This document shows positions 114-62,150 of a stretch of 64,000 nucleotides of DNA, one piece after another; the first letter of the stretch is position 1; each line of letters opens with the position of its first letter. Position numbers and translations under genes: made by a program. The stretch spans positions 124,001 to 188,000 of the IMG/VR virus record IMGVR_UViG_3300047994_000374, one strand, 5' to 3'. The notes under the pieces were generated by a model. It saw only the letters and a list, made by a program, of their open reading frames with translations, had not been told where the DNA came from and did no database searches.

Positions 114-3100
114 TTAAATAACCGTCCAAGTAGGCGTTAATAATTTCGTAGAAGATATACTCATTTCTTCGTAGCCCGCGCTCAATACTAAATGAGTATC
201 ATCTGTAATAGATTTAACTATATAGTATTTGTCCGGATCTGAACTAAAATATACAGGTTGATTTACTTTTAATAAAGTAGTAAATGATGTGCCCGTTCCA
301 GTAACATTTGCATTAAGCGCATTTAAAGATACTGTTCCATTTATTTGTAGTGGAGCACAACTCAGATAAGCTTTTTGTCCTGGATTTATTGGCACCGTCG
401 CGTTTGCATTACAACCAACGTTAATATTATAATTTGTATAGTTATAAATAATTCTTTCATACCCGGCAATACATGGTAAAAATAAATTATGCGATGTTGT
501 CATAACATTATTTGTATCTTGTACATAAATTGTTTTCCATAAGAAATCATTAACTAAAGCGGTGTAATCAGTGTCTGTTACCCAGTTAATTGTATGTGAG
601 CTTAATTCTTGCGGCGTAATGTAAACGGGTCCTTGAATTCCATATCCATCTTCAGGCATCCAAGGCTCATAGAATGGTAAATATATGGTCGTAGCAGTTG
701 CTGTGGTTCCCGAATAAGCTTGCGTCAATGTGAATGTAGTACTCGATGTGACTGTCGAGGCGACAATATATTTTGAATTTGGCTGCGTAATGAAAGTAAC
801 TGGAGCGCCAGCAATAAATGTTTGTGCTGTTGATGCGGTAACGGTATTCGATCCATTAATGACATGGAAGGTGCCAACTGCGGTGATATTTTTATTATCT
901 GGATAATATCTTTGACCAGACAATCGAATAGGCCCTGTTCGAAATCCATCTAATGTAACTGGTTCAAAATGAAATATACCTTGAGTTGGTAATGACCCGC
1001 CGATGTCCAAATCTAAAATAGCCTCAATATTTGTAGCTTGACACCCTCCCATTCTAAATAATGGAATACCTGGGCTTGTCGCTAATGCAATAGCGCCACC
1101 AAAAATATTCAATTGTGATAGTGATCCAATAAACATTGCACAATCTGTCACAAAAGTTTGGTCATCATAAATGTAATTATCTATAATTGTAGCTGGTTGC
1201 CCAGGACTAACATCTGCAAAAAAATAAGCTCCGAAGCCAGATGGAACAATGTATAAATTTGAAAACAATCCTCCACACTGTGATGTAATTGCCCAACCAT
1301 TTGAAACAATTTGTGTATTACTTACTTCTACGAATGCTGATCCCTGATCTATTCCAATACCAAAATTCCAATAATTACCAGCGGCGTTGCCTTGAACTTG
1401 GATAACACAATCTGATATTCGGGTTCTATAAGAGAATTGACAAATTTCTAATCCTCGACTGTAAGAGAAAAAATTACAACGACTTATATTGCTATTGAGC
1501 AATGCGCTTGTAGTAATACATGCGCCTATACTTTGGAACTGTAGATCGCTAACATTTGATCCAATAGAATAATTGTCTCCCCAAGGTTGAAATCTAAGCC
1601 AAACATGATATGGATTTAAATTGTAATTTACTGTTGTTGATTGTGCTATAATGTAGCCTGCCGCCAAATTTGGACTTCCAAAGCCTGTTGGGGCTGGAAC
1701 TACGGGTCGATGGGCGCTACTGAAATTTACTAAAAATGCCGTTAGTCGATTAATTAAAATTAGCTCAGATGTTGGAGCGGTAAAATTTGCATTATAAATG
1801 GCTTGTTGACACATTCTAACAGAACCATATTGAAACCCCGTTCCATAATTATATGCAAGATCGCCAACAGTAATGCCCCAACCCGAAACATCCTGACCAA
1901 TCATAATCGTTTCATAATTATTTTGAACGATAGTTCCCGTTGCAGTGGTAGAAGTTTTAGTACCATTAACAAAAACACACAAGTGAATTCCATCATAAGT
2001 AAAAGCAACATGATTCATATTTCCAGCTGTAACTGCATTTGTTGAAGTTACTGAAAAGGAGCCATTTGTTGTAGTGATATTGATAGAAATAAAATTACTG
2101 GAGTTGGTATAATTATTTGCGAATAAAAATGCTTCAGAAGCTGGTCCGGAACCACGACTTCCGCCCGAGCAAACTAATATTTGCGTTTGATTTGCGGTTA
2201 TTGGATCATAAAACATTTCAAAAGTCAGTCCAGAAATCCCCACAACTGCACCTGATGAAATAGTAGCGCCAGCAGCTGCGTTCTCTGGAAAGCCAGTATT
2301 ATATAATGAAATATGAGTGCTATCTATAACTGTCAGATTATAAATGCCACCTCCTATAATCCATACTTTTCCATTACCCGGATATGTGGTTGGAAACCCT
2401 GCCGTGCTAACTACTGAAACAGTAACGGCCGCATTGATTGCTGGCTGTGTAAAATTAGCAGTAGTTGTTGTTGATACTCCAAATCCATGAATATCATTTC
2501 CTAAAGTTTGTCCAAAATTAATTTGACCAAAAGTAGCATGTAATCCCAAACTACCAGGAGATACTGTCGCTGTAGTAATTGCTCCCCTAACTGTATAAAT
2601 TGGATCATAAACAGTTTGTCCTACTTGAAAAATTGGAAATGTATCACCATCACCTAAAGATATTGATGTTCCAATATTTACGCCATTTGTTCCAAAGGCG
2701 CCTGCTCCTTTTAAACTAACACCAAGGTATGGATTAAATATTGGTGCAGTTGTTCGGTAAATTGTAGTAGCACCAGTTAAAAGTTGAGCAGTAGCGATAC
2801 CAGTTACTGGAAAATATACAGTTTGTTCTGAGCCAACAGTATATGCATAGTTAATTGCAGCTTGAATGGCAGCGGTATCGTCCGTTATACCATCACCTTT
2901 GGCGCCAAAATCTAAAACATTGATATAAGAATTTTGTCTATTAATCCATTGATACCCATCATAAACTAATGCGTCTCCAACAGTAGAATTGTAGCCATCT
3001 ATTAATTTGCCGCCCCACCGCCAGAAATAATAATATTTTCTAATGTTGTTAATCGATTTGCTACTGTTCCATAAATACCAGCAGGATTAACACCCAAGGC

Positions 3101-3223
3101 TTGTTCAATGCCTAATATTGCAGATCGTAATTGATTAAATATATCGCCAGTAATGGGCGTCAGAAGATCAATTGCTTGCGGTAAAGTAATTATATTATCT
3201 ATTTGCGCAGGATAAACGGTCAT
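114..3223 (-). CDS. Tailspike/depolymerase-like virion protein (anchor module + pectate-lyase-3-type beta-helix + LamG-like domain), split by a -1 frameshift near 3013-3016
   Basis: 73-aa ORF 3002-3223 is homologous to the N-terminus of the 3272-5719 protein. The -1 frame continues without a start codon as GKLIDGYNSTVGDALVYDGYQWINRQNFYINVLDFGAKGDGITDDTAAIQAAIN directly into ORF 114-2549, which has LamG-like NHVAFTYDG..VFVNG. Confidence 0.75.
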
Positions 3224-3271: not shown

Positions 3272-5719
3272 TTATTGAGTAATTATCAACTGCGCGCCAT
3301 AACAAACAACACTTGTTCCATTTGTTCCACTATATAATTCTGCAGTAATAACGCCTGAGCCAGTGACCGATTCCAATGCAGTTATTTCTACTCTAACATG
3401 ATGTAATGTAGAATCTGTACTATAAGAAACTAATGAGCTGGATATAACTGTAGGAATTCCACTTAATGTTATTCCACTAACATCAAATAAATCTAAATTA
3501 ACAGTCGTACCAGGTGAAGATGTTTGAATAATACAATCTAAATAAACTTTATTATGATTAGTTAGAGGAGTAAAATAACATGCTCCTATAATTAGTTTAC
3601 TTGTGTTATCATTTGTTGTTGAACTTACTCCTGATAATAATGAAAACTGTGTTAATGGGCCAATGACAACTGCAATGCCACCTAAAATTGACCAATTAGT
3701 TCCATCAGCTACTAACTCTATTGAGCCATAATTAGTTGCTAAAGTAAAAGAGCTATATCCATCTATTAAATCAGAACTATGATGTAATATACTAATATTA
3801 TTTGTTGAGGCATTTCCTGATGAGTCTTTAATTAATAGACGTCGGCCTGCTCGCGGCGAAGGTAGTGTAATTGTTGCAGGACTAGCGCGATTAACTAAAA
3901 TTGCCTGATCTGGGCCATAACCGTCTACAGTATATGTAGCTCCAGTAATAGTTCTTGCGGCTATCTGTAATGCTGCGCCAGATGTTATTAATGCATTAGT
4001 AGTATCTGCATTTTGCCCAATACTTAAAATATTAGTACCATTAATATTATATTTCCAAGATGTCAATAAAGAGTCTATACTATCAAAAGTAAATGCTCCT
4101 GTTACATTTACGGTTTTAAACGCTGGTATAATATAGGATACAATTGAATTTGAAGTTGTTGCTATTTGTAAATTGCCTACTGCACCGTTTAAAGAAACGA
4201 CCGTATTAGTTATTTGTAATCCATATTGTCCCGCTCCTGCACTAAATAAAACATCTCCAAAACCATCTGTTGATATTAACGGATAATCTGCATTATTAGC
4301 TGTATTCCGATAAGATAAAATGTTCAATTGTGTAGCTCGTGTATTATTATTAACATCGCCCAATCGAATTAATCCGGATTGAGCTAAACCGGTAGAGCCA
4401 ACTGAAATAAAACCAGAACCAATAACAAATTGTTCTGTAGCATTTGTATTAAATTGCCATGATGTTAATTCTGAATCGCTATCGAAAGTAAATGCGTGAT
4501 TCGAAGTATTTACGCTAGCCACATGATTTGCATTAAATCCACTGTTATATGCACTTTGAAGTTTAAATGAGGTATCATCGAAACCAAATGAATTGCCATA
4601 TCCAGTAATTAATTGAATCGTGGCGCTTTGCCCTAAAATTAAAGCACCAACGCCTGTACCAGTGGTTAAATAAATATCAGAAGCTGCATCAGTCCAAAGA
4701 ATTGGAATGTCAGAAGTATTAGCACTATTACGAGCTGATATGATATTTGTTGAATTATAAGACCCTGTAGATATAACATTTCCTAATCGAATTAAACCAG
4801 TAGAAGATTGATGTCCACTAGCGTCTGGAAAAGATAAGTGAGATCCATTTGGAATATTTATTTCAGTTGGTAAAATGCCCAATGCATTAGCGCCATTAAT
4901 ATTAAATTTCCATTCAGTTAAATTGACGTCAGAATCAAATGAGAATATTCCAGTATATCCAACGCTTTGAAAACCGCTATTGACGCCACTTTGTATATGA
5001 CCACTTATTACTGCTAATGAATTTCCCGCTGAAGCTAACAAATTAACATAATAACCTGCAATTTGCGTTACCATAGAATTTGATCCAAAATATAAATCAA
5101 GAGAGCCGTCAGTACTTATAATCGAAACATCTCCTGTATTTGTATAATTACGGCTAGTTATAATATTTGTTGCTATCTGCTCAACATTGCCTAATCGAAT
5201 TAATCCAGATTGAGCCACTCCTGAATGTGCTCCAAATTCTAATGAAGCACTTGGAATGTTAACTAATCCACCTAATCCTGTTAAACTAATAACTTGTTGA
5301 CTTGTAGCTGATCCTCTTAAATCACCACCCGCACTAAATCCTGCTGGAGCAGCTTTCGGTTCCCAATAACCATCTGTAGCTGACCAAGTTAAAATATATC
5401 CGTCAGATGGTGCAGTAGATGCTATTGGTCTTCCTTGAATGCCTATTACTTTTGGAGATGGATAACTTAAGCCAAGATCTCCGCTTGCTGGGCCGGTTGG
5501 TGTTCCGCCTCCACCGCCTGTAATAATGCTTTCAAGTGTATCTAAACGAGAACGAACTGTCCCGTAAATTGTGCTTGGTTTTACCCCTAATTCTTTTTCA
5601 ACGGCAACAATCGCATCTCTTAATGCATTGACGACCGAAGCGGCTACTGGCGTTAAATTGTCAGTAGAAGGCGGCAGCGTAATATTGTTGTCGATGCTAT
5701 CAGGGTAGTTGGTAGTCAA
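3272..5719 (-). CDS. Tail fibre-like virion protein with three internal repeats
   Basis: N-terminal anchor module, GDL..YP.PKVIGIQG motif, three copies of (S/T)GLIRLG.V...RN..N..D..I..TD; Gly/Ser/Thr-rich. Confidence 0.7.
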   Translation of the reverse strand: MTTNYPDSIDNNITLPPSTDNLTPVAASVVNALRDAIVAVEKELGVKPSTIYGTVRSRLDTLESIITGGGGGTPTGPASGDLGLSYPSPKVIGIQGRPIASTAPSDGYILTWSATDGYWEPKAAPAGFSAGGDLRGSATSQQVISLTGLGGLVNIPSASLEFGAHSGVAQSGLIRLGNVEQIATNIITSRNYTNTGDVSIISTDGSLDLYFGSNSMVTQIAGYYVNLLASAGNSLAVISGHIQSGVNSGFQSVGYTGIFSFDSDVNLTEWKFNINGANALGILPTEINIPNGSHLSFPDASGHQSSTGLIRLGNVISTGSYNSTNIISARNSANTSDIPILWTDAASDIYLTTGTGVGALILGQSATIQLITGYGNSFGFDDTSFKLQSAYNSGFNANHVASVNTSNHAFTFDSDSELTSWQFNTNATEQFVIGSGFISVGSTGLAQSGLIRLGDVNNNTRATQLNILSYRNTANNADYPLISTDGFGDVLFSAGAGQYGLQITNTVVSLNGAVGNLQIATTSNSIVSYIIPAFKTVNVTGAFTFDSIDSLLTSWKYNINGTNILSIGQNADTTNALITSGAALQIAARTITGATYTVDGYGPDQAILVNRASPATITLPSPRAGRRLLIKDSSGNASTNNISILHHSSDLIDGYSSFTLATNYGSIELVADGTNWSILGGIAVVIGPLTQFSLLSGVSSTTNDNTSKLIIGACYFTPLTNHNKVYLDCIIQTSSPGTTVNLDLFDVSGITLSGIPTVISSSLVSYSTDSTLHHVRVEITALESVTGSGVITAELYSGTNGTSVVCYGAQLIITQ

Positions 5720-8796: not shown

Positions 8797-9386
8797 ATTA
8801 TACTTTATATTGGTTTGATACTGAAACAACTGGTCTTAATTCAGACTGTGATATCATTGAATTATCTCTTATTCGTTCAACGGATTATGCTCAAAAAACT
8901 TGGTGGTTAAAACCAATAAATACAAATTCAATTGAACTTGGCGCATTAAGAGTAAATGGTCATAAATTAGAAGATATTACTTGGCAAACAAAAACGGGTA
9001 AAGACACTTATCGAAATCCATCAGAGGTTATTGTTGAAATTGAAAATTGGGTAAACGAAGATATGACTCCAGCTGAAGATAGAATCTTAGTGGCTCATAA
9101 CGTAGTTTTTGATAAAAATAAAATGGAACAATTATGGGCAAGGTGCAGCTCAACAGATACTTTTCCATTTGGACGCCGGACCTTAGATACTGGGACTATT
9201 GAATTTTTTATGGATTGGTGTAAAGGCGAAATGGCAGAAGGATATAGCCTTCGAAATTTAGCTAAAAAATATGGCGTAAAAAATGATAAAGCTCACACAG
9301 CGGCTTCAGATACATTAACACTTAAAGACATTTTTGAAAAGCAAGTGGAAGCTTTTAAAAAGATATTAGTTAAACAAGGTGATTAA
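8793..9386 (+). CDS. DEDDh 3'-5' exonuclease (DnaQ/epsilon-like)
   Basis: FDTETTGL, VAHNVVFD, AHTAASD motifs. Confidence 0.9.
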   Translation: MNYTLYWFDTETTGLNSDCDIIELSLIRSTDYAQKTWWLKPINTNSIELGALRVNGHKLEDITWQTKTGKDTYRNPSEVIVEIENWVNEDMTPAEDRILVAHNVVFDKNKMEQLWARCSSTDTFPFGRRTLDTGTIEFFMDWCKGEMAEGYSLRNLAKKYGVKNDKAHTAASDTLTLKDIFEKQVEAFKKILVKQGD

Positions 9387-38406: not shown

Positions 38407-38691
38407 TTATAAAAATGCCTTTATCGACATATACTTTTCTAAAATACGATCGGCGAGATCACAAGCTTCTTTTATATTATTAAAGATAATGGGTGATGGA
38501 AGTAATTGGTTAGTTGGTTCAAATTCACGATAAAATTTAATACTCCATCTGTCGCTTATACCAAAATGCTGGACAACAATAGCAAATGGCTGTGATTCTA
38601 TTAAAAATGAACGACTATAAATGATGCGGATTTGTTCATCGATACCAGATCCACTCCATTTATGCCAATCTGTTAAATTTATTTTCCCCAT
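38407..38691 (-). CDS. Tandem paralogue B3 with shared C-terminal motif
   Basis: KINLTDWHK...; ends LEKYMSIKAFL*. Confidence 0.6.
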   Translation of the reverse strand: MGKINLTDWHKWSGSGIDEQIRIIYSRSFLIESQPFAIVVQHFGISDRWSIKFYREFEPTNQLLPSPIIFNNIKEACDLADRILEKYMSIKAFL

Positions 38692-50928: not shown

Positions 50929-50960
50929 TTGATAGTTCACATCCGTTCTTTAAGCGTATT
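50843..50960 (+). ncRNA. Putative TnpB omega-RNA 3' scaffold/right end (ending TAGTTCAC at 50940) plus guide ATCCGTTCTTTAAGCGTATT
   Basis: Hairpins GGGCAG-GAA-TTGTCC and TCAA-AA-ACC-GCAA-GGT-AA-TTGA; TTCAC terminus typical of IS605 right ends; 5' boundary uncertain. Confidence 0.6.
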
Positions 50961-53900: not shown

Positions 53901-56900
53901 GCATTGCCGTATTCAAAGTAAGCGTTTGCCCATTAATGTTTGTAATGGTGTATCCTGCAGTATTAAATCCGATCTCGTTAATAAATATCGTATTGCCGAT
54001 CGATATGTTATAGGCAGAAAAATTAATAGATGAAGTTACAACGGGAGATCCTATTGCCGTAACTAAATCGTCTGAACCAATAATGTCTGATGAGGCTAAT
54101 CCAACAACTTCTTCCGGATCAATGGTTCTGTATTTCTCATGCAGATATGGATTAAGTTTTTGTCCATATCTAATGATATTTGGAACTTCAAATCCATCAA
54201 TAAATAAGTGCATCTCATCACGGTTGTTTCTGGAATTTAATTTCCATGAGGCTGCAACCATATGTGGTTCATTCATTTTCCATGAAGATATATCTGATGA
54301 TAATGAGTACGCAACGCCATTTTTATCAAAAACTCTAAAATTCATATAACCGGAAACATCTTTAAAAATAGAAAGGCGTGAGTTATTTTTCGCTGTTCCA
54401 AAATCCAAAATAAAATGCTCTATATCTGAAACAAAACTAAATCCTTCATCAATAGGAAATCCACCTGTAATTGTAACGGTCGCTGAATTGGTTCCAGTAG
54501 TAGTTGTAAGATTGGAGGGCTTTGGAAGTGTTAAAGATTGAAGGTCATAAAACTTTCCATTTGAACTAATTTTAACTGTATAGGTATTATTATTAGCAAA
54601 TACATAGCCGTCAATGATTTCTACATACCAGCGAAGATAATTGCCAGAAGCATCATTATCATAATAAATGAATACGCCATCTTTATTTGTATTTGGATAA
54701 CCAGATACATTATCATTCTTATTGAGTGAAAAATTGCCAGCAGATATTATTGGGTGATATTCTGATGCTCCAATGAATACTCGTGACGGGGCAATGGGCA
54801 AATTATTAACTGTGATTTGAAATGTCAATTCTGCATCATTATCCAAACCATTCCATTGTGGAAGTATCCATTGTTCAAATGATCCTTCTTCTAATCGTAA
54901 GTTTGAATTAGCAGGAATTTTTATAGTTTGATTGCTATTAATTAGAGCGCCGTTGCCATACTTTGCAGGAACCAATTGAAACGAGCCAGTTGTGATTGGT
55001 GGTTCAGGAAATAGAATAGACGATCCTAATGACCAAGAATTAAATGCAGATTCAACAATGGCTGGTTCAATGTGAGAAATAATTTGTCCAATATTTTTCA
55101 TTGCCGCAATCGTTGGACCCTGAATGAATGAAGATAGGGCTGCCATTAATGCATCACGATATCTTTCACGATCAAGCTCCAAATCAAAAGTAGCAAGTAA
55201 AGGAACATTAACAAGCGTTCCGAAATTTTTTAATAAGGCATCACGGAGAGCACCAACTTTATAAGAAACATAATATTGCGTTCCTTGTGGTAAATTTTTA
55301 TTTTGACGAAAATCTAATGCATTGTCACCATATTCATAAGAAACAAGAATTTCATCGGCAACATAACTGTAATCAATAAAGAAATCACCTTTATTGTAAT
55401 CAACAACTACCCTAGCTAATGAATTGATTGTGAATGAATAATTGACATTAACTAAATCTCCAATAGCAGGAGATCCAGTTCCAGGCAATACTAATTTAAT
55501 TGGATTTCCTGGAACAACAGATCCAGAACTACTATTCCATAATTGCTGCCCATCAGACACTCGAACAACACTAAATGTGTATGTAATTGTTGAAGATAAA
55601 AATGGAATATTTTCATTTAAATTAACATAAAAATGCGTTCCATCATATTGAACGTTTTCAAAAGCCTGTTTATTAATAGGCTGAACTGTAATCACATTGC
55701 CAGAGAACGTAGAAGATTGGGCAAAATTAGTTGGAGAAGTGTTATTCGATAAATCATTAAAATCAAAAATAGATCGAACGAATTTGATTTGATTTGTGAC
55801 ACCGTCTACGAAAGTTGAACCAACAAACGCTCCAATTTCATTATTGAATATTTGATATGGTGCAGAAACGGTATCATTCAAAAATGCTTCATCAGAGACA
55901 TCTAAATTATCTGGAACAATACTTGTATCCCCAAATGATACATAAGTAAATTGTTTATTTTTTGGATTAAGTGGTGAAATGCGATAATAAATATCATTAA
56001 CACTTATGATATGTGAATTATCCGGCACGATACTATTTTTCTTATAAGATGCCGAGCCAATATTGAAATCTTGATCGTTCGCTACTGCAACATAAACAAT
56101 ACCATTTCCATAATCAACCATATATTGTCCAACAGCTGTTAATCGCTGTAGATTGGTTGTCACATTAAACTCAATATTGTACCATTTTTCAGAAACGAAA
56201 ACTGCTGTATTATTAAATGTAAGGGTCGTATTAAAAGAAGATCCGATCGCATCTTGTGTGCCAGCAATAATATTATTATCTGCCAAAAATATGGTGAAAA
56301 TTTTAATACCATTATTAACCGTATTATTAACTGTTAAAAGCTCATTGGAGACATCTAAAAATGAAGAATTCTCACCTATGTTTGAAAGTATTCTTGGGGC
56401 ACTATTGTATCTAAAATAAACGCGGTTGTCTTCCCAACGATCAACATTATAAATTTCACCAGACGTTTCGTTATATACTTGAAAAACATCAGTAATGGGT
56501 GAGTTTTCAGTAGTCAAAACATTGATTGCATTTAAACGATTGGCAACTCTTTCATTTAACGATTCTTCATGAACTTCTGCAATATAATCAGTACCAGGAA
56601 CTAAAATTTGTTCGTAATTAAAAGTAACCGTTCCTGGAAAATTAATTAAAGAACCGTTTGGTAATGAAACTACATCTAAACTATCAGGATCAAGAACATA
56701 ATCGATTTCTGAACTGTAATCAAATTTGTAGTAGTAAGTTGCTAATGGTGGAGATGGTCCTGTTCCGTCATTAAGTCCGCTTGAACCATATACATAAACA
56801 GTTCCATTTGGATAATCAATTGAATATTGTCCAATCATAAATGGAAGTGATGATAAGCTGAATGGAATTTCAGTTGTAAACGCTGGGTGAGGCGTACCAA

Positions 56901-58056
56901 GAGTAGAATTAGGATCTGTGAAAACAACATCCCCTATTTCGCCAGGATTATTCGAAGCATCTGTGATAGGGGCGTTCTTTAAATTAAATACATTAATGAT
57001 TGGAGGTAATACTTCACGAATAGATTGTAGCGTTGTAAAAACATCAAGTGAGGCATCGTCAATCTGACGCCCTAAACTTTTATATTCGTATTGTATTGTG
57101 ATATTAAAAATTTGATCGATGGCAAAGTTTGGATCCTCTAAAACTTTTTCACTTAATTTAACTTGATTGTCTTCAAGCAGTAGGTAAGATGATGCAAAAT
57201 CCTGATCATATCTTGAACTTTCTAATTGATAGCCGAGAGTTGGGATATCATAAGTATAGTTTGGATAAGATGTAAGTAAAGTAAAAGTAATGCTATCTAC
57301 CTTACTTATTGGGTTGTTTTGCAAATTAAAAGTGAGCGTATTGATGTTAAAAGTTCCAACTTGATCTTCTGATGATGGTAAAATTAAATCAGTTGTGATT
57401 TGGCGCTGTAAAGTAATTGGATATGAAGGGAAATCATCAAACACCATATTCATAGTTGCATTTGATGCAGTTGGACCTAGGCCGACCCGCATTACTTCGT
57501 AGGCACTCTCTTCATTTAAACGATCAAATGGTCCGGGTCCTCGATATTTCTGTTCGTCAATGATTGTGTAAGATAAGTAATTTTCATTTTTAGCTTGACG
57601 AATATCATAAAGCGCGCGTGACATATTAATCGAAAGTGATTGAATATAACTTGCGAGGACTGGACTTGCTAAATCATAAATATTATTCTGAAAATATGCG
57701 GACAGGTAATTGGCAACTGGATTATCAGATGACATTGGTCCAGTGATTAATGTTTTATTTGATATGCCATCATTACCGATTTGCGCATCTGCATTGATAG
57801 AGATAAATGGATTAGCTGCGGTCGATTGAAATTGAAGAAAATACGCAGCCAATGTAGTAAGTGGCTGGCATGTAATAGTTAGTGTAGCTCCTACAACACT
57901 CACTTGAAGAACTTCTGAATCAGGAGCGTTTGGCGTTTGAGATAAAATAGAAACGTTTGCCGGCACTAATTCTGGAGTCAAATTCGAAGTGAAAGTGACT
58001 GCGATTTCAGTGGAACTATTGATAACAACATTGAGTATTCTAAGGTTTTGTGCCAT
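50950..58056 (-). CDS. Very large baseplate/wedge-type structural protein with LamG-like domains
   Basis: 2368 aa; RERYRDAL...FIQGPT..AM baseplate-wedge-like segment; EG(S/T).E.W..P, HMVAASW, LFIDG/LFLDG LamG motifs; coupled to baseplate J. Confidence 0.65.
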   Translation of the reverse strand: MAQNLRILNVVINSSTEIAVTFTSNLTPELVPANVSILSQTPNAPDSEVLQVSVVGATLTITCQPLTTLAAYFLQFQSTAANPFISINADAQIGNDGISNKTLITGPMSSDNPVANYLSAYFQNNIYDLASPVLASYIQSLSINMSRALYDIRQAKNENYLSYTIIDEQKYRGPGPFDRLNEESAYEVMRVGLGPTASNATMNMVFDDFPSYPITLQRQITTDLILPSSEDQVGTFNINTLTFNLQNNPISKVDSITFTLLTSYPNYTYDIPTLGYQLESSRYDQDFASSYLLLEDNQVKLSEKVLEDPNFAIDQIFNITIQYEYKSLGRQIDDASLDVFTTLQSIREVLPPIINVFNLKNAPITDASNNPGEIGDVVFTDPNSTLGTPHPAFTTEIPFSLSSLPFMIGQYSIDYPNGTVYVYGSSGLNDGTGPSPPLATYYYKFDYSSEIDYVLDPDSLDVVSLPNGSLINFPGTVTFNYEQILVPGTDYIAEVHEESLNERVANRLNAINVLTTENSPITDVFQVYNETSGEIYNVDRWEDNRVYFRYNSAPRILSNIGENSSFLDVSNELLTVNNTVNNGIKIFTIFLADNNIIAGTQDAIGSSFNTTLTFNNTAVFVSEKWYNIEFNVTTNLQRLTAVGQYMVDYGNGIVYVAVANDQDFNIGSASYKKNSIVPDNSHIISVNDIYYRISPLNPKNKQFTYVSFGDTSIVPDNLDVSDEAFLNDTVSAPYQIFNNEIGAFVGSTFVDGVTNQIKFVRSIFDFNDLSNNTSPTNFAQSSTFSGNVITVQPINKQAFENVQYDGTHFYVNLNENIPFLSSTITYTFSVVRVSDGQQLWNSSSGSVVPGNPIKLVLPGTGSPAIGDLVNVNYSFTINSLARVVVDYNKGDFFIDYSYVADEILVSYEYGDNALDFRQNKNLPQGTQYYVSYKVGALRDALLKNFGTLVNVPLLATFDLELDRERYRDALMAALSSFIQGPTIAAMKNIGQIISHIEPAIVESAFNSWSLGSSILFPEPPITTGSFQLVPAKYGNGALINSNQTIKIPANSNLRLEEGSFEQWILPQWNGLDNDAELTFQITVNNLPIAPSRVFIGASEYHPIISAGNFSLNKNDNVSGYPNTNKDGVFIYYDNDASGNYLRWYVEIIDGYVFANNNTYTVKISSNGKFYDLQSLTLPKPSNLTTTTGTNSATVTITGGFPIDEGFSFVSDIEHFILDFGTAKNNSRLSIFKDVSGYMNFRVFDKNGVAYSLSSDISSWKMNEPHMVAASWKLNSRNNRDEMHLFIDGFEVPNIIRYGQKLNPYLHEKYRTIDPEEVVGLASSDIIGSDDLVTAIGSPVVTSSINFSAYNISIGNTIFINEIGFNTAGYTITNINGQTLTLNTAMPTTLTNARFSVNQTNYFITSDINVAPSVAISTIHTFITGADLQVTINSPTVSSTSTNFTTANVLPGYLLRIDNGAFNLTYTILQVSGHSLTITDEATINLTNATYQIYSNTENELPGVNALRPDYSISQDSNFNNVLTVFNDVFKNDLILIRTFGINSRTVKQNYYVWSDGYENVLMTQLPPPISLDQATITKIIVPNIAIGPANSTLSGGIFTSNNLPFSPPTNNILGRTLSATLSGTNIDFTTPAQVIIHGTSSNSPITETISFSDYGTLNFVHAYQAISYIQVVVKPINSSKNAGAVIVEEKYPLTYAEFSDGYVPIVRFSYHIGGGYTLSGSGSTVSDGYNLFSMGDVGNYLMISSPAQAAGYYVISAVSTDRHSLTVSPVGGGTVASFTAGTYQILDVNAYRSGLQNGFFTFELKNMPGTPYLLRDGFYKLEYETYASIKFKPFSAEYIYLGSDMFGHHQANSVLDQTVIYSIMLEDTRIGMSVPNNQRSITKDFNSLKPWNPDMNTLVFINFDEFPFTNIANFYTNGNSQTALLQSSWAVNDNFPQSIVILDKPIVLSNEGLLDTKKEGTIEFWMSPLYDTANDPQERYYFDASSAIVEEAISTNNVSVKISNPASQILSVTLKAGDPTIDYFAGGTLSIDTENAIQENTTSQGNGSVKVSQAILQVISVKIVGDLSGKDYGQDSVIGSDGKTIYLSITLPRSNLTMSVIYKSTATGDNNLNGQVIRLNRQLPSQNSQVVVNYLPQGVQGDRISIYKDTAGYMNFKIRASNVDYALRAQAVWDAGSWHRVKCQYRVNSKNSTMALFLDGYEYNNLLFGQGALFGSNPYTFGSTTVGGSGLSGTTILFSDPINYLYVGSDYLEQSGADTLLSNLRISNAYRPLYTVFGENLDVNYTSILKNNFPVESDLYTTYLQQDNSTKSLVTNFATLISDDSNDFTITIFDEFSLIANSAKLKEILNSLILTLSPANSRPFIKYA

Positions 58057-61000
58057 TAACGAACTTCCGTATTGATAATAATATTGTTGGGCTCAAATCC
58101 CTGATCTCCGTTGGCATTGAAAGTTAATATTTGTCCTTTCAATCCAGTTTGATTAAAATATAAAATGCGGGCTCTTGAAATACCAGTTACGGCTTGCGCT
58201 ACATTGATAAGCGTCACCTGATCGATTGTCTCTCCCAAAGTGGTGCTCGTTAACGCTGTCACCAATTGATTTCTCAAATTTTGAAGAACTGTCGTAGTTG
58301 AATTTAGATAGTTAGCAGCAATAACTACATTTATTGTAAGATCAAGTTGAGCTAATTTGTCGCCGCGCACGAGAACATCTGCATTTATAGGTCGTGAATT
58401 TTCTACCGAGAAAGTTACATCTGAAATAAGCTTATTGTAGTTATATTGGATTACAATTCTTTCATTTTGCTTTGGTGCCAAATAATCATAAAATGCTGTA
58501 TAGCGGGCACCGAGGTTTGGTTTAGTAAATGATGTGGCTGTAAATTTCGTAGCTTGTGATGCACCGAAACCTGAACTAACATACATCTTATTAATCAATG
58601 CAAACTTTTTATTTGTATAAAGAGTCCCAATACGAGTAAATGATAAACTTTCCTGATCATTATCAGTCGTGTAATAAAATGTTATGCGAAGCTGATCTCC
58701 AATAGCTGGCAAATTATTGGTCGCCCCAGTTGAAGAATTATTTACAGTGTTTGGAAGTATAAAATCTAAACTTGATAGTGCTGGATTTGCCAACATATCT
58801 TCTGCATAATAAAGGTTGCTTGAGAGCGTTGTATTTTTTATATCATATGTAGCTAATGTCTCGAGGACGATATCACTGCCAATAGTATATGTATCTACTT
58901 TTTCAAGTTTAACAATTTTAGCTATCTTGATATTTGATGGAATTGATGCTGATGAATTTAAGTTCAGTGTTTTGCGTAGGGCTTCTTGTAAATTTTGGTA
59001 AAGCCCAGTTGCCGTTGCAGTAAAAACAATGTCTTGTGCTAATGTCATTGTAGTTCCGGCAATATTAATAACGCCAGTATTTACATTTTGATCTGCAATG
59101 GTTCCAATTATTCTTGTTGGTGCTTGACGAATGTTCTGAAAATTAAAGAACATAACAAAGACTTCATCGCCAACAGAAGCATTAGTACTTACAGGAATTA
59201 ATAGACGATTATTTACTAAATCAATTGTTCCAGAATAATTCCATAACTCTTGCCCATCTAACAGTCTAACAACGGCAATTTGATCTTTAATAAGATGTGA
59301 TGTCGTTAAAGTAATTGTAATTTCATTTGTTGAGGCGTTATAGCTTAAAATATCATATGTACCATTGTTATTTGGCGTAGATGCATTAATAATTTTCACG
59401 ACCTTGTTGGTGATATCTGGTAATGTAGAAAAATTAACTGTCGGGCTTGTAACTTGCGCTTGCCCTGAACCATTAAACGATAAGTATCCATCCGAAACAA
59501 CAAAGTAATATCCATCTGAATTTGCATCAATAACATTAAATGACAGTCCGCTTACCTGTGCCGTGAAACTTGAAATTGGAACAGTAAAACTATTCGTCGC
59601 CACATCTAAACTTAGCTGATTAACGGATGTCTTGATAACTTCATTGTTAAAGCTAAATGGTTGAAATCTGCGAACATCAAGGGCATAGTATAAAATCAGA
59701 ACACGATCATTAGTAACTGGAGCATTGAATCCTGTTAAAATGAGTTGGTAGTTTCCATCTGTGCCATTGACAATCTGACCGCCATTATTTTCGTTCCATA
59801 ATTCTTTACCATCTGATAAACGAATAATTGAAATGACTTGCCCTTGAAGCAAAGAATAATCTGTCGTATTTATACTTAATTCAACAAAGTATTGGTTGCT
59901 TAAATTCTTTTGAACAATTTGATTTTCACGACGAGATACATTGACAATTGAAAAATTATTAAAACCATTATTGTTTAATGTGTTATATCCATTTCCACAT
60001 CGGCTTGCTGGTAAAGATGTAACCGCCGATGAGTAAAGATCAGAAACATTTGCAATATAAGTGACTTTCAAAACAATGCTATCGCCTGTCGTATTGATCA
60101 ACGAAGATGGTATCGTGATTTGAGTTCCTGAAGAGCTTCCTTGTGCAGTTGAAGATTGATAAACATTGGTTGAATTCAAATATACTGAAACGACATCATT
60201 GACAGAAGCTACTGCATCGCTTGGAAGAATGATTGTCGTAGTATAAAGTAAATTTGTGCCAACTACAATTGGTATGCTCGTAAAGCTGCCGTTTGATTGT
60301 GCAGTATCATAAAGTTCAACATTTGAATTGGTTAAAACAACGCTATCAACCGTATTTGTTGCAATTGCCAAAAAGCTCGTAACAACGGACAATCTTCCGG
60401 TAAAAATTCCAGATTGAACTTGCTGAATATAACCATCAATCTTTAAATAATTATCAGTTGATATTACTGTGTCTATTGGATGGCTTGTATTTCCAATAAA
60501 ATAATTATTGCCAGTAACTGCTGTAAATTCAATTAATTCATTCCGAACGGCAGAGGCATATCCCCAATCAATGCTGTCCGTTGAGGGACGTGGATTTTCA
60601 GTGCTTTTAAGCCCATCAAAGTCAGAGTATGGATCAAATCCGATTATCCAAGTATAATCAACTTGTAATACATCACTTGGGGAAGGAAGCGTGTTGCCTG
60701 AAATCTGAATACGTCCAGTTAAATTGTAGGTTGGTGTGTTGTCGTAATTTTGGTTGGTAACAACATAGCGTTCGCCCGTATTGGTGTTAAAAACTCGAGT
60801 TACACTGGCAGCTGGAGTATGAATAAGTTGAATGATAGAACGATCGGTTGTGACTGCACTATTTTCATTAGTAATATTTAAATTTTGTGTTGCAGATGTA
60901 ATTTCTGTAACATCGGTAAAGGTAGTTGCATCTTGTCCGTTATTTTGACCCTTGACAATATCTTCTTGGAAGTCAATTGCATTTGAAGTCCAAGCAAAGG

Positions 61001-62150
61001 TATCAAATCCAAAAGGACTTCCGCCATATGCACCCATGTCTTTAATGAGTTCAAAATTTCCTGATACACGACCATAACTATCGGTGGTTTTTGGGGTAAA
61101 ATTCGATCCGCTCAATGATCCAGTAACCGTCAGAAGCGTATCAACGGGTTGTGCTGGCAATTGTCCATTTGCGATATCATCAATCCGACGACGATTAATG
61201 GTTTTATTTGCATCGGCTGCAATTTGACCTAATACAAAGTTATTTTTTGGATTGGTTGGATCGCCTGTATTGCTTTTATCTTGGTAAATATAAGTGTCAG
61301 TATTTTGAACTTCGTTAGTTCCGAGGACAACGACATCTACCTTGCCTCCGGAGCCTTCAGAAATGACCGTTAAAACGCCATTCTCCACAGCTGATACAGT
61401 TCCATCCCTGGTCATCAAAGGATTACCTGGACCGATTACAGCCGCATCTTGAACGCCTGTTGTTCCAAGCGCTGCATTCAAATATCCTAATGTCGTTCCA
61501 ACGCTTGATCCAGAGAACGCAGATAGAATTCGATTTCGAAAAGCAGCATCTGTTTCTTGATCTGTTCCGCCATTAAAAGCATTTACATTGGTTACATTAT
61601 TGACACCAGAAATCGATGTAGATGATAAAGCATATTGCCCTATGTTGCTGGATGAACCTGGAGCCGATGCAATAACCGTCACTTGAATAGCGTATTGATC
61701 TGTAATGCCAGCAAATGCTAATTGAGCTTGAAATTGCGTGGCAACAGAACGATAATAATTAAGATTAGATGGAATTAGTGAAACGCCCGTATTAACAACG
61801 AATGATAACCCATTGTTTGCCGTGATACTCGCGCCCTTGTTTACATTGATTGTCGCATTAAGTGATGAAAATGTAAGTAAAGCAATTCCGGTAGAAGTTG
61901 TGGATTGCTTTCGAATAAGACCGAAATTTTTTGCTAATTTATCTAAATCTGAGCCAACAGAAAGGCGAAGTGACTGTTTGTTTGAAATTCCAGAAAGCTC
62001 ATCATATAATAAAGAAAGTTGGGCTGCGGGACCTTCAATAAATAGATCGCGAGCTACTGAACCGGGCGAGGTCGTCATGTTAGGCTGCGCCAGACGAAAA
62101 AAATCGAGCAGATTTAAAATAATTTCTGACGATGACCTTAAGTTTACCAA
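58056..62150 (-). CDS. Baseplate J-like protein with large insertion
   Basis: PGSVARDLFI, DLDKLAKNFGLIRK, G..SNI, GGTDQETDAAFRNRI, GGKVDVVV. Confidence 0.85.
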   Translation of the reverse strand: MVNLRSSSEIILNLLDFFRLAQPNMTTSPGSVARDLFIEGPAAQLSLLYDELSGISNKQSLRLSVGSDLDKLAKNFGLIRKQSTTSTGIALLTFSSLNATINVNKGASITANNGLSFVVNTGVSLIPSNLNYYRSVATQFQAQLAFAGITDQYAIQVTVIASAPGSSSNIGQYALSSTSISGVNNVTNVNAFNGGTDQETDAAFRNRILSAFSGSSVGTTLGYLNAALGTTGVQDAAVIGPGNPLMTRDGTVSAVENGVLTVISEGSGGKVDVVVLGTNEVQNTDTYIYQDKSNTGDPTNPKNNFVLGQIAADANKTINRRRIDDIANGQLPAQPVDTLLTVTGSLSGSNFTPKTTDSYGRVSGNFELIKDMGAYGGSPFGFDTFAWTSNAIDFQEDIVKGQNNGQDATTFTDVTEITSATQNLNITNENSAVTTDRSIIQLIHTPAASVTRVFNTNTGERYVVTNQNYDNTPTYNLTGRIQISGNTLPSPSDVLQVDYTWIIGFDPYSDFDGLKSTENPRPSTDSIDWGYASAVRNELIEFTAVTGNNYFIGNTSHPIDTVISTDNYLKIDGYIQQVQSGIFTGRLSVVTSFLAIATNTVDSVVLTNSNVELYDTAQSNGSFTSIPIVVGTNLLYTTTIILPSDAVASVNDVVSVYLNSTNVYQSSTAQGSSSGTQITIPSSLINTTGDSIVLKVTYIANVSDLYSSAVTSLPASRCGNGYNTLNNNGFNNFSIVNVSRRENQIVQKNLSNQYFVELSINTTDYSLLQGQVISIIRLSDGKELWNENNGGQIVNGTDGNYQLILTGFNAPVTNDRVLILYYALDVRRFQPFSFNNEVIKTSVNQLSLDVATNSFTVPISSFTAQVSGLSFNVIDANSDGYYFVVSDGYLSFNGSGQAQVTSPTVNFSTLPDITNKVVKIINASTPNNNGTYDILSYNASTNEITITLTTSHLIKDQIAVVRLLDGQELWNYSGTIDLVNNRLLIPVSTNASVGDEVFVMFFNFQNIRQAPTRIIGTIADQNVNTGVINIAGTTMTLAQDIVFTATATGLYQNLQEALRKTLNLNSSASIPSNIKIAKIVKLEKVDTYTIGSDIVLETLATYDIKNTTLSSNLYYAEDMLANPALSSLDFILPNTVNNSSTGATNNLPAIGDQLRITFYYTTDNDQESLSFTRIGTLYTNKKFALINKMYVSSGFGASQATKFTATSFTKPNLGARYTAFYDYLAPKQNERIVIQYNYNKLISDVTFSVENSRPINADVLVRGDKLAQLDLTINVVIAANYLNSTTTVLQNLRNQLVTALTSTTLGETIDQVTLINVAQAVTGISRARILYFNQTGLKGQILTFNANGDQGFEPNNIIINTEVR

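What the first reader, a model, noticed from the sequence alone, without database searches (positions are those of the whole stretch)
114..62150. DGY tripeptide strongly enriched in virion proteins of a phage with its own glycosylation cluster: candidate modification sequon
Seen: I count 21 DGY in about 6,800 aa of five structural proteins (3 in 114-3223, 4 in 3272-5719, 6 in 45859-49611 including DGYDGY, 5 in 50950-58056, 3 in 58056-62150), often as SDGY. A rough composition estimate gives only 1-2 expected. Among non-structural proteins I saw only one (ELDGY in a nuclease motif). Flanks are otherwise unrelated, so this is not a domain repeat, and the homologous module in 11205-12923 lacks it (ADNNLLIYSAADSRWEPK versus SDGYILTWSATDGYWEPK). 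The window also encodes two GT2, a GT4, another GT-B protein, an SDR sugar enzyme and a methyltransferase. Inference: DGY may be a surface turn recognised by a phage enzyme (e.g. Tyr or adjacent Ser O-glycosylation of the virion), a binding site for a decoration protein, or a cleavage/isoaspartate site.
Basis: partly seen in the sequence, partly recalled or inferred. Interest (0 to 1): 0.8.

Follow-up and report, generated by a model that had tools for sequence, protein, structure and literature searches.

The report
DGY motif on megaphage tail proteins
The exact tripeptide Asp-Gly-Tyr is about 16-fold over-represented, and repeatedly re-invented, on the outward-facing tail proteins of a large clade of roughly 400-500 kb phages, which points to a short recognition or modification motif whose reader is still unknown.

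Summary
The five tail/baseplate genes carry 21 DGY against 1.3 expected. DGY is by far the top of all 8000 tripeptides. All other ORFs together carry one.

The signal is at protein level: codons vary, and out-of-frame matches are at chance level. DG without Y and GY without D are not enriched, nor are NGY, EGY or SGY.

The window is part of a 394 kb moss-metagenome phage distantly related to Bacillus phage G. Hundreds of relatives show the same enrichment: 289 observed against 15 expected in 62 tail ORFs, at GC 26-48%. Across three protein families DGY occurs at 94 alignment columns; 19 are near-invariant and most are sporadic. Relatives also show tandem xDGY amplifications. Phage G and one homologous baseplate lineage lack the enrichment.

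In AlphaFold models the Asp usually sits directly after a β-strand end. Sheath outer regions and a 2078-aa neighbour also carry DGY; tape-measure-sized and tube-sized proteins do not.

A glycosyltransferase/dehydratase module always follows the tail genes, so co-occurrence cannot discriminate. Its GT4-like gene is frameshifted here.

Modification sequon (favoured, about 0.33) versus structural strand cap remains undecided.

The parts
58056..62150 (-). Baseplate wedge (gp6/Baseplate_J-like) protein, 1364 aa, with a long C-terminal extension. DGY codons at 60437-60429, 59516-59508 and 59492-59484, all outside the conserved N-terminal domain.
   Evidence: Pfam PF04865 E 1e-19 and phrog_6 E 7e-33. 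DGY positions. In 120 homologs: mean 3.03 DGY against 0.19 expected, at 11 alignment columns.
50950..58056 (-). Giant 2368-aa baseplate/fibre protein built of β-sandwich modules. DGY at 54612-54604, 53394-53386, 52959-52951, 52878-52870 and 51462-51454.
   Evidence: In 113 full-length homologs: mean 6.35 DGY against 0.48 expected, at 55 columns, rank 1 of 2853 comparable tripeptides. AF2 model of residues 1070-1800, pLDDT 78.8. Weak Foldseek matches to a glycan-binding protein, CBMs and phage tail parts.
45859..49611 (-). 1250-aa tail protein with two dockerin/EF-hand-like loops. DGY at 47718-47710, 47604-47596, 47595-47587 (these two form DGYDGY), 47325-47317, 47097-47089 and 46557-46549.
   Evidence: Dockerin_1, E 4e-4, below cut-off. 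In 120 homologs: mean 5.68 DGY against 0.22 expected, at 28 columns, rank 1 of 2350. AF2 model, pLDDT 70.8. hhalign.
3272..5719 (-). 815-aa tail fibre. DGY at 5404-5396, 5374-5366 (the SDGYILTWSATDGYWEPK stretch), 3925-3917 (DGYGPDQAI, an RTX-like turn) and 3763-3755.
   Evidence: No Pfam or PHROG match. No relative found in viral contigs apart from the same contig.
114..2999 (-). Distal part of a second tail fibre/tailspike-like gene (pectate-lyase-like N-terminal motif plus ConA-like Laminin_G_3 domain). It lacks a start codon of its own until 2549. DGY at 2999-2991, 2960-2952 and 650-642.
3002..3223 (-). 73-codon N-terminal anchor homologous to the start of 3272..5719. It ends at two stop codons and is out of frame with 114..2999; a -1 shift near ggtggggcggcaaattaatag would join them.
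   Evidence: The same letters occur in a contig of a second run; contigs of a third run stop matching at 3007-3014.
11205..12923 (-). 572-aa tail-fibre paralogue that shares the ...WEPK module but has no DGY. It serves as an internal contrast.
40498..40506 (-). The only DGY outside the tail genes, in the 382-aa ORF 40030..41178, which has no family match.
33587..34516 (-). SDR sugar-nucleotide enzyme. Its best match is dTDP-glucose 4,6-dehydratase, below the equivalog cut-off.
   Evidence: Pfam Epimerase E 1.5e-34. NCBIfam TIGR01181, 164 bits against a cut-off of 365. Syntenic in relatives.
34513..35322 (-). GT2 glycosyltransferase, conserved next to the SDR gene across the clade.
   Evidence: Pfam PF00535 E 2e-11. 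67 related loci found with it.
38679..39371 (-). Second GT2 glycosyltransferase.
   Evidence: Pfam PF00535 E 3e-17. Weak NCBIfam hits to polysaccharide, teichuronic-acid and rhamnosyl transferases.
39350..40033 (-). Class I SAM-dependent methyltransferase within the sugar cluster.
   Evidence: Pfam Methyltransf_23 E 1e-20.
41166..42292 (-). GT4-like (GT-B) glycosyltransferase in two overlapping frames (41417..42292 and 41166..41450). The break is at a T11 run at 41481-41491.
   Evidence: The homolog is intact in L011, L020 and L021.
9379..10389 (+). Possible further GT-B glycosyltransferase lying between the tail-fibre genes. The match is weak.
   Evidence: Pfam Glyco_trans_1_3 E 1.9e-4 (21 bits, cut-off 25). 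NCBIfam MJ1255/VC2487 family E 4e-8, below cut-off.

Best explanation
DGY is a genuine short linear motif that selection maintains as a three-residue unit. It occurs on the outward-facing tail proteins of a large clade of phage-G-like megaphages: sheath N-terminal regions, the extension of the baseplate wedge protein, the giant baseplate/fibre proteins and the tail fibres. It typically begins the turn directly after a β-strand.

I think it most likely serves as a sequon: a surface-presented element read as a unit by a clade-specific enzyme that modifies it covalently. The leading candidate is O-glycosylation of the Tyr hydroxyl (or of a neighbouring residue) in the host cytoplasm. The candidate enzymes are the nucleotide-sugar-dependent glycosyltransferases encoded directly downstream of the tail genes, fed by the adjacent 4,6-dehydratase-like enzyme, with a methyltransferase trimming the sugar.

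Shown: the enrichment, its exact-residue specificity, its protein-level origin, its restriction to tail proteins, recurrent gain and amplification, the strand-exit position, and the conserved synteny with the sugar module.

Inferred: that a reader enzyme exists, that it is one of these glycosyltransferases, and that Tyr is the acceptor.
For: Strength and specificity:
- 21 observed against 1.3 expected in the window; DGY is the top of all 8000 tripeptides.
- Only the full tripeptide is enriched. DG-nonY and nonD-GY are at expectation, and Y is 9.6x after DG.
- Pooled over 62 tail ORFs from about 45 contigs: DGY 19x, DGF 1.2x, NGY 2.1x, EGY 0.5x, SGY 0.8x.
- Such exactness, especially Tyr but not Phe and Asp but not Asn or Glu, is typical of enzyme sequons and unusual for a purely conformational turn.

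Protein-level origin:
- All synonymous codons are used, and out-of-frame GAYGGNTAY is at chance.
- The enrichment holds from GC 0.26 to 0.48.

Recurrent origin:
- DGY sits at 11, 28 and 55 alignment columns in three families, ranked 29th of 2093, 1st of 2350 and 1st of 2853 comparable tripeptides.
- 39 of the 94 columns have under 5% occupancy.
- At many variable columns sequences have all three residues or at most one, with two-of-three intermediates rare.
- Relatives carry tandem xDGY amplifications.

Context:
- Local contexts differ (hairpin, strand, helix start, loops), but the Asp lies within 2 residues after a strand end in 15 of 30 columns, against 14% for random positions.

Distribution:
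- Present in the sheath (outside its conserved core), a 2078-aa neighbour (11 against 0.42), a 720-aa baseplate protein, the wedge extension and the fibres.
- Absent from tape-measure-sized, tube-sized and hub-region proteins and from 17 other large ORFs.

Lineage specificity:
- Phage G's tail module has 2 against 2.0 expected.
- A homologous baseplate lineage has 0 in about 3,800 aa, with TGx where this clade has its most conserved DGY.

Sugar module:
- The GT4-like/GT2/GT2/SDR module directly follows the tail genes in every relative whose tail-adjacent neighbourhood could be read.

Precedents:
- Tyr-linked glycans on Firmicute S-layer proteins (PMC2943079).
- Glycosylated mycobacteriophage capsid and tail-tube proteins (Freeman et al. 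2023, as cited in PMC12619734).
Against: - There is no direct evidence of any modification.
- The co-occurrence of DGY enrichment with the GT module has no contrast group, so it carries little weight.
- In relatives the module is interleaved with Fpg/Nei DNA glycosylase and C5 DNA methylase genes. In the window it is adjacent to a Dam-type methylase. The transferases may therefore act on DNA or on host wall polymers.
- The GT4-like gene is frameshifted in this very phage while DGY is retained.
- From my own knowledge, no GT2 or GT4 enzyme is known to glycosylate Tyr.
- 19 of 94 columns are near-invariant. One is the last ligand position of a dockerin-like Ca loop, and others alternate with L/V/I, which looks structural or partly buried.
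- DGY counts per protein are over-dispersed rather than held constant.
- Side-chain exposure was not measured.
Confidence: 0.33

Rival explanations
1. DGY is a purely structural micro-motif. It acts as a β-strand C-cap and tight turn in which Asp and Gly form the turn (an SDG-type loop) and the Tyr hydroxyl makes a stabilising hydrogen bond, comparable in spirit to a tyrosine corner or an Asp-box. The clade would have adopted it repeatedly to rigidify very large β-sandwich tail proteins. No enzyme reads it.
For: - The Asp lies within 2 residues after a strand end in 15 of 30 columns, including nearly all high-occupancy sites.
- DGY632 and the relatives' site 1084 are two-residue hairpin turns in confident model regions.
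- Flanks are β-strand-like, with S, I or A at position -1.
- 19 columns are near-invariant.
- Some sites sit in a shared β domain where DGY aligns with DGV.
- A conserved GTKDGY exists inside the Baseplate_J domain of distant phages.
- From my own knowledge, tyrosine-corner Tyr residues are also poorly replaced by Phe.
Against: - Turn-forming equivalents are not enriched: NGY 1-2x, DG followed by any other residue about 1x, DGF 1.2x.
- The same folds in phage G and in the P0372 lineage do without DGY.
- Contexts also include a helix start and long loops.
- Tandem xDGY arrays of up to four units are hard to explain as single strand caps.
Confidence: 0.3
2. DGY forms many weak ligand-binding micro-sites on the tail surface. 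The ligand would be Ca2+ (Asp carboxylate plus backbone carbonyls) or host cell-wall glycan (Tyr stacking plus Asp hydrogen bonds). The sites would give multivalent adhesion or metal-dependent rigidity.
For: - Some sites fit Ca-binding turns: DANSDGY (a DxNxDG pattern), DGYGPDQAI, and the relatives' DGYGIDGYGVDEG.
- Distant phages carry GTADDGYGADxIx tandem repeats that match the RTX xGxGxDxUx pattern.
- DGY763 closes a dockerin-like loop.
- The carrier proteins contain ConA-like or CBM-like β-sandwiches and resemble glycan-binding proteins weakly.
- A GDSL/SGNH esterase tail protein suggests a polysaccharide receptor.
Against: - Positions -2 and -4 are not enriched for Asp or Asn, and only 5 of 50 non-redundant sites have Gly at +1. 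Ca-loop contexts are therefore a minority.
- A three-residue linear element in diverse local structures is unlikely to form a defined sugar site.
- The motif also occurs on the sheath and the wedge, not only on distal receptor-binding parts.
- The clade spans GC 26-48%, hence probably many hosts with different receptors.
Confidence: 0.15
3. DGY is a neutral by-product. It would be spread by 9-15 base slippage duplications and by module exchange among paralogous tail genes, then inherited by a large clade. There would be no selection on the tripeptide itself.
For: - Tandem xDGY amplifications exist.
- Some sites lie in domains shared between tail proteins.
- Counts are over-dispersed, as expected from lineage effects.
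- Tail-fibre modules visibly recombine: contigs of a third run break at 3007-3014.
Against: - Most of the 94 columns are isolated substitutions with unrelated flanks.
- Codons differ between sites.
- Near-invariant sites persist across sequences of 55-70% identity.
- The enrichment persists across relatives down to 44% identity and across wide GC drift.
- No other tripeptide behaves this way.
Confidence: 0.05

Closest known systems
Protein glycosylation sequons and their turnover on viral surface proteins (N-x-S/T; Bacteroidota O-glycosylation D-(S/T)-(A/I/L/V/M/T)). Recalled from my own knowledge.
   Same: It is a three-residue linear element with exact residue requirements. It is enriched only on exposed proteins. 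It is gained and lost at many non-homologous positions, while some sites stay fixed.
   Different: No glycan has been shown. The putative acceptor would be Tyr (or Asp), not Asn, Ser or Thr. Modification would have to occur in the cytoplasm by soluble Leloir-type transferases. No known sequon reads D-G-Y.
Virion glycosylation of mycobacteriophages by phage-encoded glycosyltransferases (Freeman et al. 2023, cited in PMC12619734).
   Same: Phage-encoded glycosyltransferases sit near structural genes, and the virion surface proteins are the substrate.
   Different: There the glycans sit on C-terminal regions of capsid and tail-tube subunits. Here the candidate sites are dispersed DGY turns on sheath, baseplate and fibre proteins of a myovirus-type megaphage. 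No experimental evidence exists here.
Tyrosine O-glycosylation of S-layer proteins in Paenibacillus, Thermoanaerobacter and related Firmicutes (PMC2943079).
   Same: It is a bacterial-world precedent for Tyr-linked glycans rich in 6-deoxyhexose. The phage's nearest cultured relative infects a Firmicute, and its SDR enzyme resembles a dTDP-glucose 4,6-dehydratase.
   Different: S-layer glycans are assembled on a lipid carrier and transferred outside the membrane by an oligosaccharyltransferase. No such enzyme, flippase or initiating transferase was seen in the window. No DGY consensus is reported for those sites.
Asp-box (S-x-D-x-G-x-T-W) and tyrosine-corner motifs: short β-hairpin or strand-end motifs found in unrelated folds. 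Recalled from my own knowledge.
   Same: These are short, recurrent motifs at a β-turn or strand end, occurring with unrelated flanks. They carry an essential Asp/Gly or an essential Tyr hydroxyl.
   Different: The sequence pattern and spacing differ. Those motifs are universal, whereas DGY enrichment is confined to one phage clade and absent from homologous folds elsewhere.
Bacillus phage G (Donellivirus gee) baseplate module.
   Same: It is the closest cultured relative: 28.6% identity over the N-terminal Baseplate_J domain of the wedge protein. It is also a roughly 500 kb myovirus-type jumbo phage.
   Different: Its tail module shows no DGY enrichment: 2 observed against 2.0 expected in 9,019 aa.

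Membership tests
Enzyme-read modification sequon (glycosylation-type) | Short linear motif with strict residue identity, containing a possible acceptor residue. | tested here: met
   DGY is enriched 16-19x while DGF, NGY, EGY, SGY and DG-other are about 0.5-2x. Tyr-OH and Asp are possible acceptors.
Enzyme-read modification sequon (glycosylation-type) | Sites lie on solvent-exposed parts of the substrate proteins. | tested here: inconclusive
   The Asp sits at a strand exit in 15 of 30 columns, and the carriers are outward-facing tail proteins. No coordinates were available to compute side-chain exposure. Some columns alternate with L/V/I.
Enzyme-read modification sequon (glycosylation-type) | A cognate transferase is present and co-varies with the motif across genomes. 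| tested here: inconclusive
   The GT4-like/GT2/GT2/SDR module is syntenic with the tail genes in all relatives whose tail-adjacent neighbourhood could be read. No DGY-poor genome with a readable neighbourhood was available as contrast. The GT4-like gene is frameshifted in the window.
Enzyme-read modification sequon (glycosylation-type) | A covalent adduct is present on the motif. | not testable with these tools
   This needs mass spectrometry of virions or of co-expressed fragments.
Generic two- or three-residue β-turn (type I' NG/DG, or SDG G1-bulge loop) | Located between or after β-strands. | tested here: met
   AF2 secondary structure and the strand-end statistic.
Generic two- or three-residue β-turn (type I' NG/DG, or SDG G1-bulge loop) | Degenerate residue use: Asn interchangeable with Asp, and many residues allowed after Gly. 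| tested here: not met
   NG is 1.07x, NGY about 1-2x, DG followed by non-Y about 1.0x, and Y after DG 9.6x.
Asp-box (S-x-D-x-G-x-T-W) | The spaced consensus S-x-D-x-G-x-T-W. | tested here: not met
   The flank profile of 50 non-redundant sites shows no T or W at the required positions, and D, G and Y are contiguous.
Ca2+-binding DxDxDG / EF-hand / dockerin / RTX turns | Asp or Asn at the alternating ligand positions before DG, or G-x-G-x-D after it. | tested here: not met
   This holds for a few sites only: DGY763 in a dockerin-like loop, DANSDGY and DGYGPD. Positions -2 and -4 are not enriched for D or N, and +1 is Gly in 5 of 50 sites.
Repeated protein domain (the sites as one conserved position of a domain family) | Flanks of different sites align significantly. 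| tested here: not met
   Profile-profile comparison of 18 site-centred slices was run. Apart from overlapping slices, only a few pairs score, e.g. wedge ~830-900 against 1250-aa ~650-720 (probability 97.6%) and the two dockerin-like loops. Most pairs are unrelated.
DNA-level motif (restriction, methylation or recombination site) | Fixed nucleotide sequence, frame-independent and strand-symmetric in occurrence. | tested here: not met
   GAT/GAC, all four GGN codons and TAT/TAC are used. 22 of 27 minus-strand matches to GAYGGNTAY are in-frame DGY. There are 2 plus-strand matches, against about 3 expected per strand.
Baseplate_J / T4 gp6-like wedge protein (for gene 58056..62150) | Significant match to the family profile above the curated cut-off. 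| tested here: met
   PF04865, 71 bits (cut-off 21), E 1e-19. phrog_6 E 7e-33.

The most novel reading that the evidence does not exclude
DGY is the sequon of a previously undescribed phage-encoded, cytoplasmic protein glycosylation system. The system would attach 6-deoxyhexose-containing, possibly methylated, glycans to tyrosine on the exposed tail surfaces of a widespread clade of 400-500 kb phages. Site density would be tuned by gain, loss and tandem amplification of the tripeptide, and glycan expression might be switched by a homopolymer tract in the GT4-like gene.
Probability: 0.18. Interest if true: 0.9.

Novelty: new variant of a known kind. Interest (0 to 1): 0.66.

Why it matters
If DGY is a modification sequon, it would define a new virion glycosylation chemistry in phages: a Tyr-directed, cytoplasmic system with a simple three-residue code. 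It would also mean that a large, uncultured group of environmental megaphages coats its tail in glycans. That would bear on host recognition, resistance to proteases and receptor mimicry. It could also provide a portable tag for glyco-engineering.

If DGY is instead a structural strand cap, it is a rare example of a lineage-specific, convergently spread stabilising micro-motif. That would be useful for designing β-rich proteins.

In both cases the motif is a compact, testable handle on proteins of 1,000-2,400 residues that otherwise have no annotation. It is also a simple sequence signature for recognising the tail genes of this clade in metagenomes.

Tried and rejected
- DNA-level cause: rejected, because codons vary and out-of-frame matches are at chance.
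- Single repeated domain: rejected as a general explanation. The flank profile is nearly flat and few profile-profile matches exist.
- General EF-hand/DxDxDG explanation: rejected, because there is no D/N enrichment at -2 or -4.
- Avoidance of deamidation-prone NG in favour of DG: rejected. NG is not depleted (1.07x) and DG-nonY is not enriched.
- Stabilising selection on the number of sites per protein: not seen. Variance exceeds the independent expectation.
- General property of tail proteins: rejected. Phage G shows 2 against 2.0. The 3.4x in distant wedge proteins is mostly one conserved GTKDGY site.
- Host identification through TnpB relatives in genomes: uninformative. The best hit is 54% identity on a 1.7 kb MAG contig. 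No tRNA genes are in the window.
- Near-identical cultured phage: none.
- Fold matches: none significant for the 1250-aa model, and only weak multi-domain matches for the 2368-aa model.
- Sequence matches of the transferases to solved structures: none useful.
- ESM Atlas: scores below the useful range.
- Literature searches for a DGY motif or a Tyr-glycosylation consensus: nothing relevant. One wanted paper was not held.
- Walking along the contig by DNA pattern: the second attempt returned the same stored chunk. One exact-protein look-up failed.
- Contrast lineage without DGY: only short contigs (8-19 kb) were found, so the GT module could not be scored there.

Full report
**1. The observation**

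There is one DGY in the remaining 13,637 residues of called ORFs.

Composition predicts 1.30 and a first-order Markov model 3.9. Poisson p is 1.4e-18 and 1.3e-9. DGY is far ahead of every other tripeptide in these proteins; the runner-up has p of about 2e-4.

The signal belongs to the whole tripeptide. DG not followed by Y (29) and GY not preceded by D (20) are at expectation. Y follows DG 9.6 times more often than composition predicts. NG is not depleted. NGY, EGY and SGY are at or below expectation; DGF (5 against 1.4) and AGY (7 against 1.5) are mildly raised.

All synonymous codons are used. The degenerate DNA pattern occurs out of frame and on the other strand only at chance level. The cause therefore lies in the protein, not the DNA.

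One correction concerns '114-3223'. It is two reading frames: a 73-codon N-terminal anchor (3002..3223) ends in two stops, and the rest (114..2999) continues in another frame.

**2. What the genes are**

The window is part of IMGVR_UViG_3300047994_000374, a 394 kb contig from a moss metagenome.

- Gene 58056..62150 is a Baseplate_J/gp6-like wedge protein with a roughly 1,000-residue extension, and 62193..62636 is a gp25-like baseplate protein.
- 114..2999 carries a tailspike-type N-terminal motif and a ConA-like domain.
- 43977..45365 is a tail protein with a GDSL/SGNH esterase domain.
- The 815-, 1250- and 2368-residue proteins match no family, apart from dockerin-like loops in the 1250-residue one.
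- The closest cultured phage is Bacillus phage G, at 28.6% identity over the wedge N-terminal domain.

- an SDR enzyme most like dTDP-glucose 4,6-dehydratase;
- two GT2 genes;
- a SAM methyltransferase;
- a GT4-like gene;
- a weak GT-B candidate at 9379..10389.

**3. Relatives**

Searches with three of the proteins returned hundreds of homologs at 55-82% identity, many from contigs of 340-510 kb.

| Family | Mean DGY per protein | Expected | Alignment columns with DGY | Median columns, comparable tripeptides | Rank of DGY |
|---|---|---|---|---|---|
| Wedge (bpJ) | 3.03 | 0.19 | 11 | 3 | 29 of 2093 |
| 1250-aa | 5.68 | 0.22 | 28 | 4 | 1 of 2350 |
| 2368-aa | 6.35 | 0.48 | 55 | 10 | 1 of 2853 |

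Of the 94 columns, 19 are occupied in more than 90% of members and 39 in fewer than 5%. At many variable columns sequences carry either all three residues or at most one. Intermediates with two of the three are rare, for example 49/1/48/22 or 38/2/73/0 for three, two, one and zero matches. Shared ancestry can contribute to this pattern.

Some relatives carry tandem amplifications such as IDGYVDGYFDGY, DGYVVDGYMIDGYVMDGY and FDGYGIDGYG.

A wider sample was anchored on the GT2 gene. It comprises 62 tail ORFs from about 45 contigs with GC 0.26-0.48. It gives 289 DGY against 15.2 expected (19x), with DGF 1.2x, NGY 2.1x, EGY 0.5x, SGY 0.8x and DGL, DGT and DGS about 1x. Seventeen other large ORFs in the same loci have none. 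These pooled counts include homologous sites, so the p-values overstate independence. The column counts above are the fairer measure.

**4. Where the enrichment stops**

- Phage G's tail module has 2 DGY against 2.03 expected in 9,019 residues.
- Among representatives of the wedge family, the observed/expected ratio falls from 16 in the close clade to 5.4, 4.5 and 3.4 with distance.
- The residual 3.4x is mostly one conserved GTKDGY site inside the Baseplate_J domain.
- A relative at 44% identity still has 19 DGY against 1.05 expected in its three large tail proteins.
- A lineage at about 39% identity has none in about 3,800 residues of baseplate proteins. It carries TGA, TGN or TGT where this clade has its most conserved DGY. 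The fold therefore does not require DGY.

Within this phage, extra sequence outside the window shows where else DGY occurs:
- the sheath has 2 DGY, at residues 147 and 419, outside the conserved C-terminal domain;
- a 2078-residue protein upstream of the sheath has 11 against 0.42 expected;
- 275-, 465- and 720-residue proteins have 1, 1 and 3.

The tape-measure-sized protein, the two roughly 215-residue proteins and the 299-, 692- and 747-residue proteins have none. That gives 39 DGY in about 11,300 residues of the carrier proteins. These are the large, K/R/E-poor, S/T/N-rich proteins expected to face outward.

**5. Local structure**

Two AlphaFold models were built on 57-61 homologs (pLDDT 70.8 and 78.8).

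In the 1250-residue protein:
- DGY632 is a hairpin turn;
- DGY670/673 lie in a long strand;
- DGY763 lies at the end of a dockerin-like loop, at a helix start;
- two further sites lie in low-confidence loops.

In the 2368-residue protein, all four window sites and the main sites of relatives have the Asp directly after a β-strand. Over 30 DGY columns in that region, the Asp lies within two residues after a strand end in 15. The figure is 14% for random positions and 24% for other Asp residues.

Flanks of 50 non-redundant sites carry little information beyond S, I or A at -1 and hydrophobic residues nearby.

Profile-profile comparison finds a shared domain between the wedge extension and the 1250-residue protein, where DGY aligns with DGV. 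It also finds two dockerin-like loops. Most site pairs are unrelated.

For the second it gives weak matches to a Bacteroides surface glycan-binding protein, CBMs and phage tail parts.

**6. The sugar module**

In every relative whose tail-adjacent neighbourhood could be read, a GT4-like gene, a GT2, a roughly 330-residue unknown, a second GT2 and the SDR gene follow the 1250-type tail gene and precede a TubZ/PhuZ-like tubulin gene.

This linkage, stable from GC 0.26 to 0.48, suggests a tail-related role. It offers no contrast for a correlation test.

Three observations count against a simple link:
- relatives have an Fpg/Nei DNA glycosylase and sometimes a C5 DNA methylase inside the module;
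- the window has a Dam-type methylase next to it;
- the GT4-like gene of this phage is split at a T11 run.

No transferase matches a characterised enzyme closely enough to name its acceptor.

**7. Interpretation**

The exact-residue specificity argues for a motif read as a unit by a clade-specific macromolecule: Tyr not Phe, Asp not Asn or Glu, and nothing for DG or GY alone. So do the restriction to outward-facing tail proteins, the recurrent origin, the tandem amplification, and the absence from homologous folds elsewhere.

A modification sequon served by the adjacent sugar enzymes is the most economical candidate. It has precedents in Tyr-linked S-layer glycans (PMC2943079) and in glycosylated mycobacteriophage virions (Freeman et al. 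2023, cited in PMC12619734). I give it about one chance in three.

A Tyr-hydroxyl-dependent strand-cap motif is nearly as likely. It is favoured by the consistent strand-exit position and the invariant sites.

Ca2+ or glycan micro-sites explain a minority of contexts. Neutral spread explains little.

No step beyond the sequence statistics and predicted secondary structure is shown. The existence of a reader enzyme, its identity and the acceptor atom are all inference.

**8. Verdict**

The finding is real, clade-wide and, as far as the searched literature shows, undescribed. The experiment that would settle it is feasible with recombinant proteins.

Noticed in passing
window 41166-42292, homopolymer at 41481-41491: The GT4-like glycosyltransferase gene is split into 291- and 94-codon overlapping frames at an 11-base T run on the coding (minus) strand. 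Nine or twelve T would keep the frame. Homologs in relatives are intact and read EGFYF there. This could be a phase-variable tract, transcriptional slippage or an assembly error.
   Followed up: partly
window ~3000-3025 (gene 114-3223): The tail-fibre gene changes frame just after its conserved N-terminal anchor, and the anchor frame ends in two stop codons. The same letters occur in a contig of a second moss-metagenome run. Contigs of a third run stop matching at 3007-3014, which suggests a module-swap junction at this point.
   Followed up: partly
window 49804-50928 (+): A TnpB / IS605 OrfB gene (OrfB_IS605 plus Cas12f1-like TNB domain) lies on the opposite strand between the 2368-aa and 1250-aa tail genes. 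Relatives have these two genes adjacent. The closest genomic relative found is 54% identical, on a 1.7 kb MAG contig.
   Followed up: partly
window 42348-43196 (+): A LAGLIDADG homing endonuclease gene is inserted between the 234-aa gene (43193..43897) and the GT4-like gene. It is absent at this place in L011, L020 and L021. Another relative has a LAGLIDADG gene elsewhere in the sugar module.
   Followed up: partly
L025:3764-10000 (same contig, outside the window): A 2078-aa protein just upstream of the tail sheath gene has 11 DGY against 0.42 expected and matches no PHROG family. The sheath itself (L025:10945-13731) has 2 DGY in its non-conserved N-terminal two thirds.
   Followed up: partly
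P0421 residues ~1110-1195; P0439 residues ~1050-1090: Distant baseplate-wedge homologs of about 2,000-2,300 aa carry 13-residue tandem repeats GTADDGYGADxIx. These fit the RTX-type Ca-binding turn xGxGxDxUx with DGY at its start.
   Followed up: no
window, all five large tail genes versus the rest: The tail proteins are strongly depleted in Lys (2.4% against 9.0%), Glu (2.7% against 5.4%) and Arg (2.4% against 3.3%), and enriched in Ser, Thr and Asn. The sheath and the 2078-aa protein outside the window share this composition.
   Followed up: no
window 30822-32240 (-): A TubZ/PhuZ-like tubulin gene lies directly after the sugar module, and this order is conserved in all relatives examined. A GH25 lysozyme (29690..30550), a UvsW-like helicase and a GIY-YIG endonuclease follow.
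   Followed up: no
L011:16497-17336, L020:17026-17862, L021:15755-16624 and 16648-17595: In relatives an Fpg/Nei-type DNA glycosylase, and in one case a C5 DNA methylase, sit inside the glycosyltransferase module. The window lacks the Fpg gene there. This raises the possibility that the transferases act on DNA.
   Followed up: no
window 38068-38406 (-): A small ORF inside the sugar cluster has a sub-threshold Pfam match to accessory-Sec protein Asp3 (E 0.0012, 19 bits against a cut-off of 27). From my own knowledge, Asp3 belongs to the export pathway of glycosylated serine-rich adhesins. The match is probably chance.
   Followed up: no
P0195, P0203 (1250-aa family members): Two longer members of the 1250-aa tail protein family carry a precomputed PF11999 domain hit (recalled as the ice-binding-like DUF3494 family) that the window's protein lacks.
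   Followed up: no
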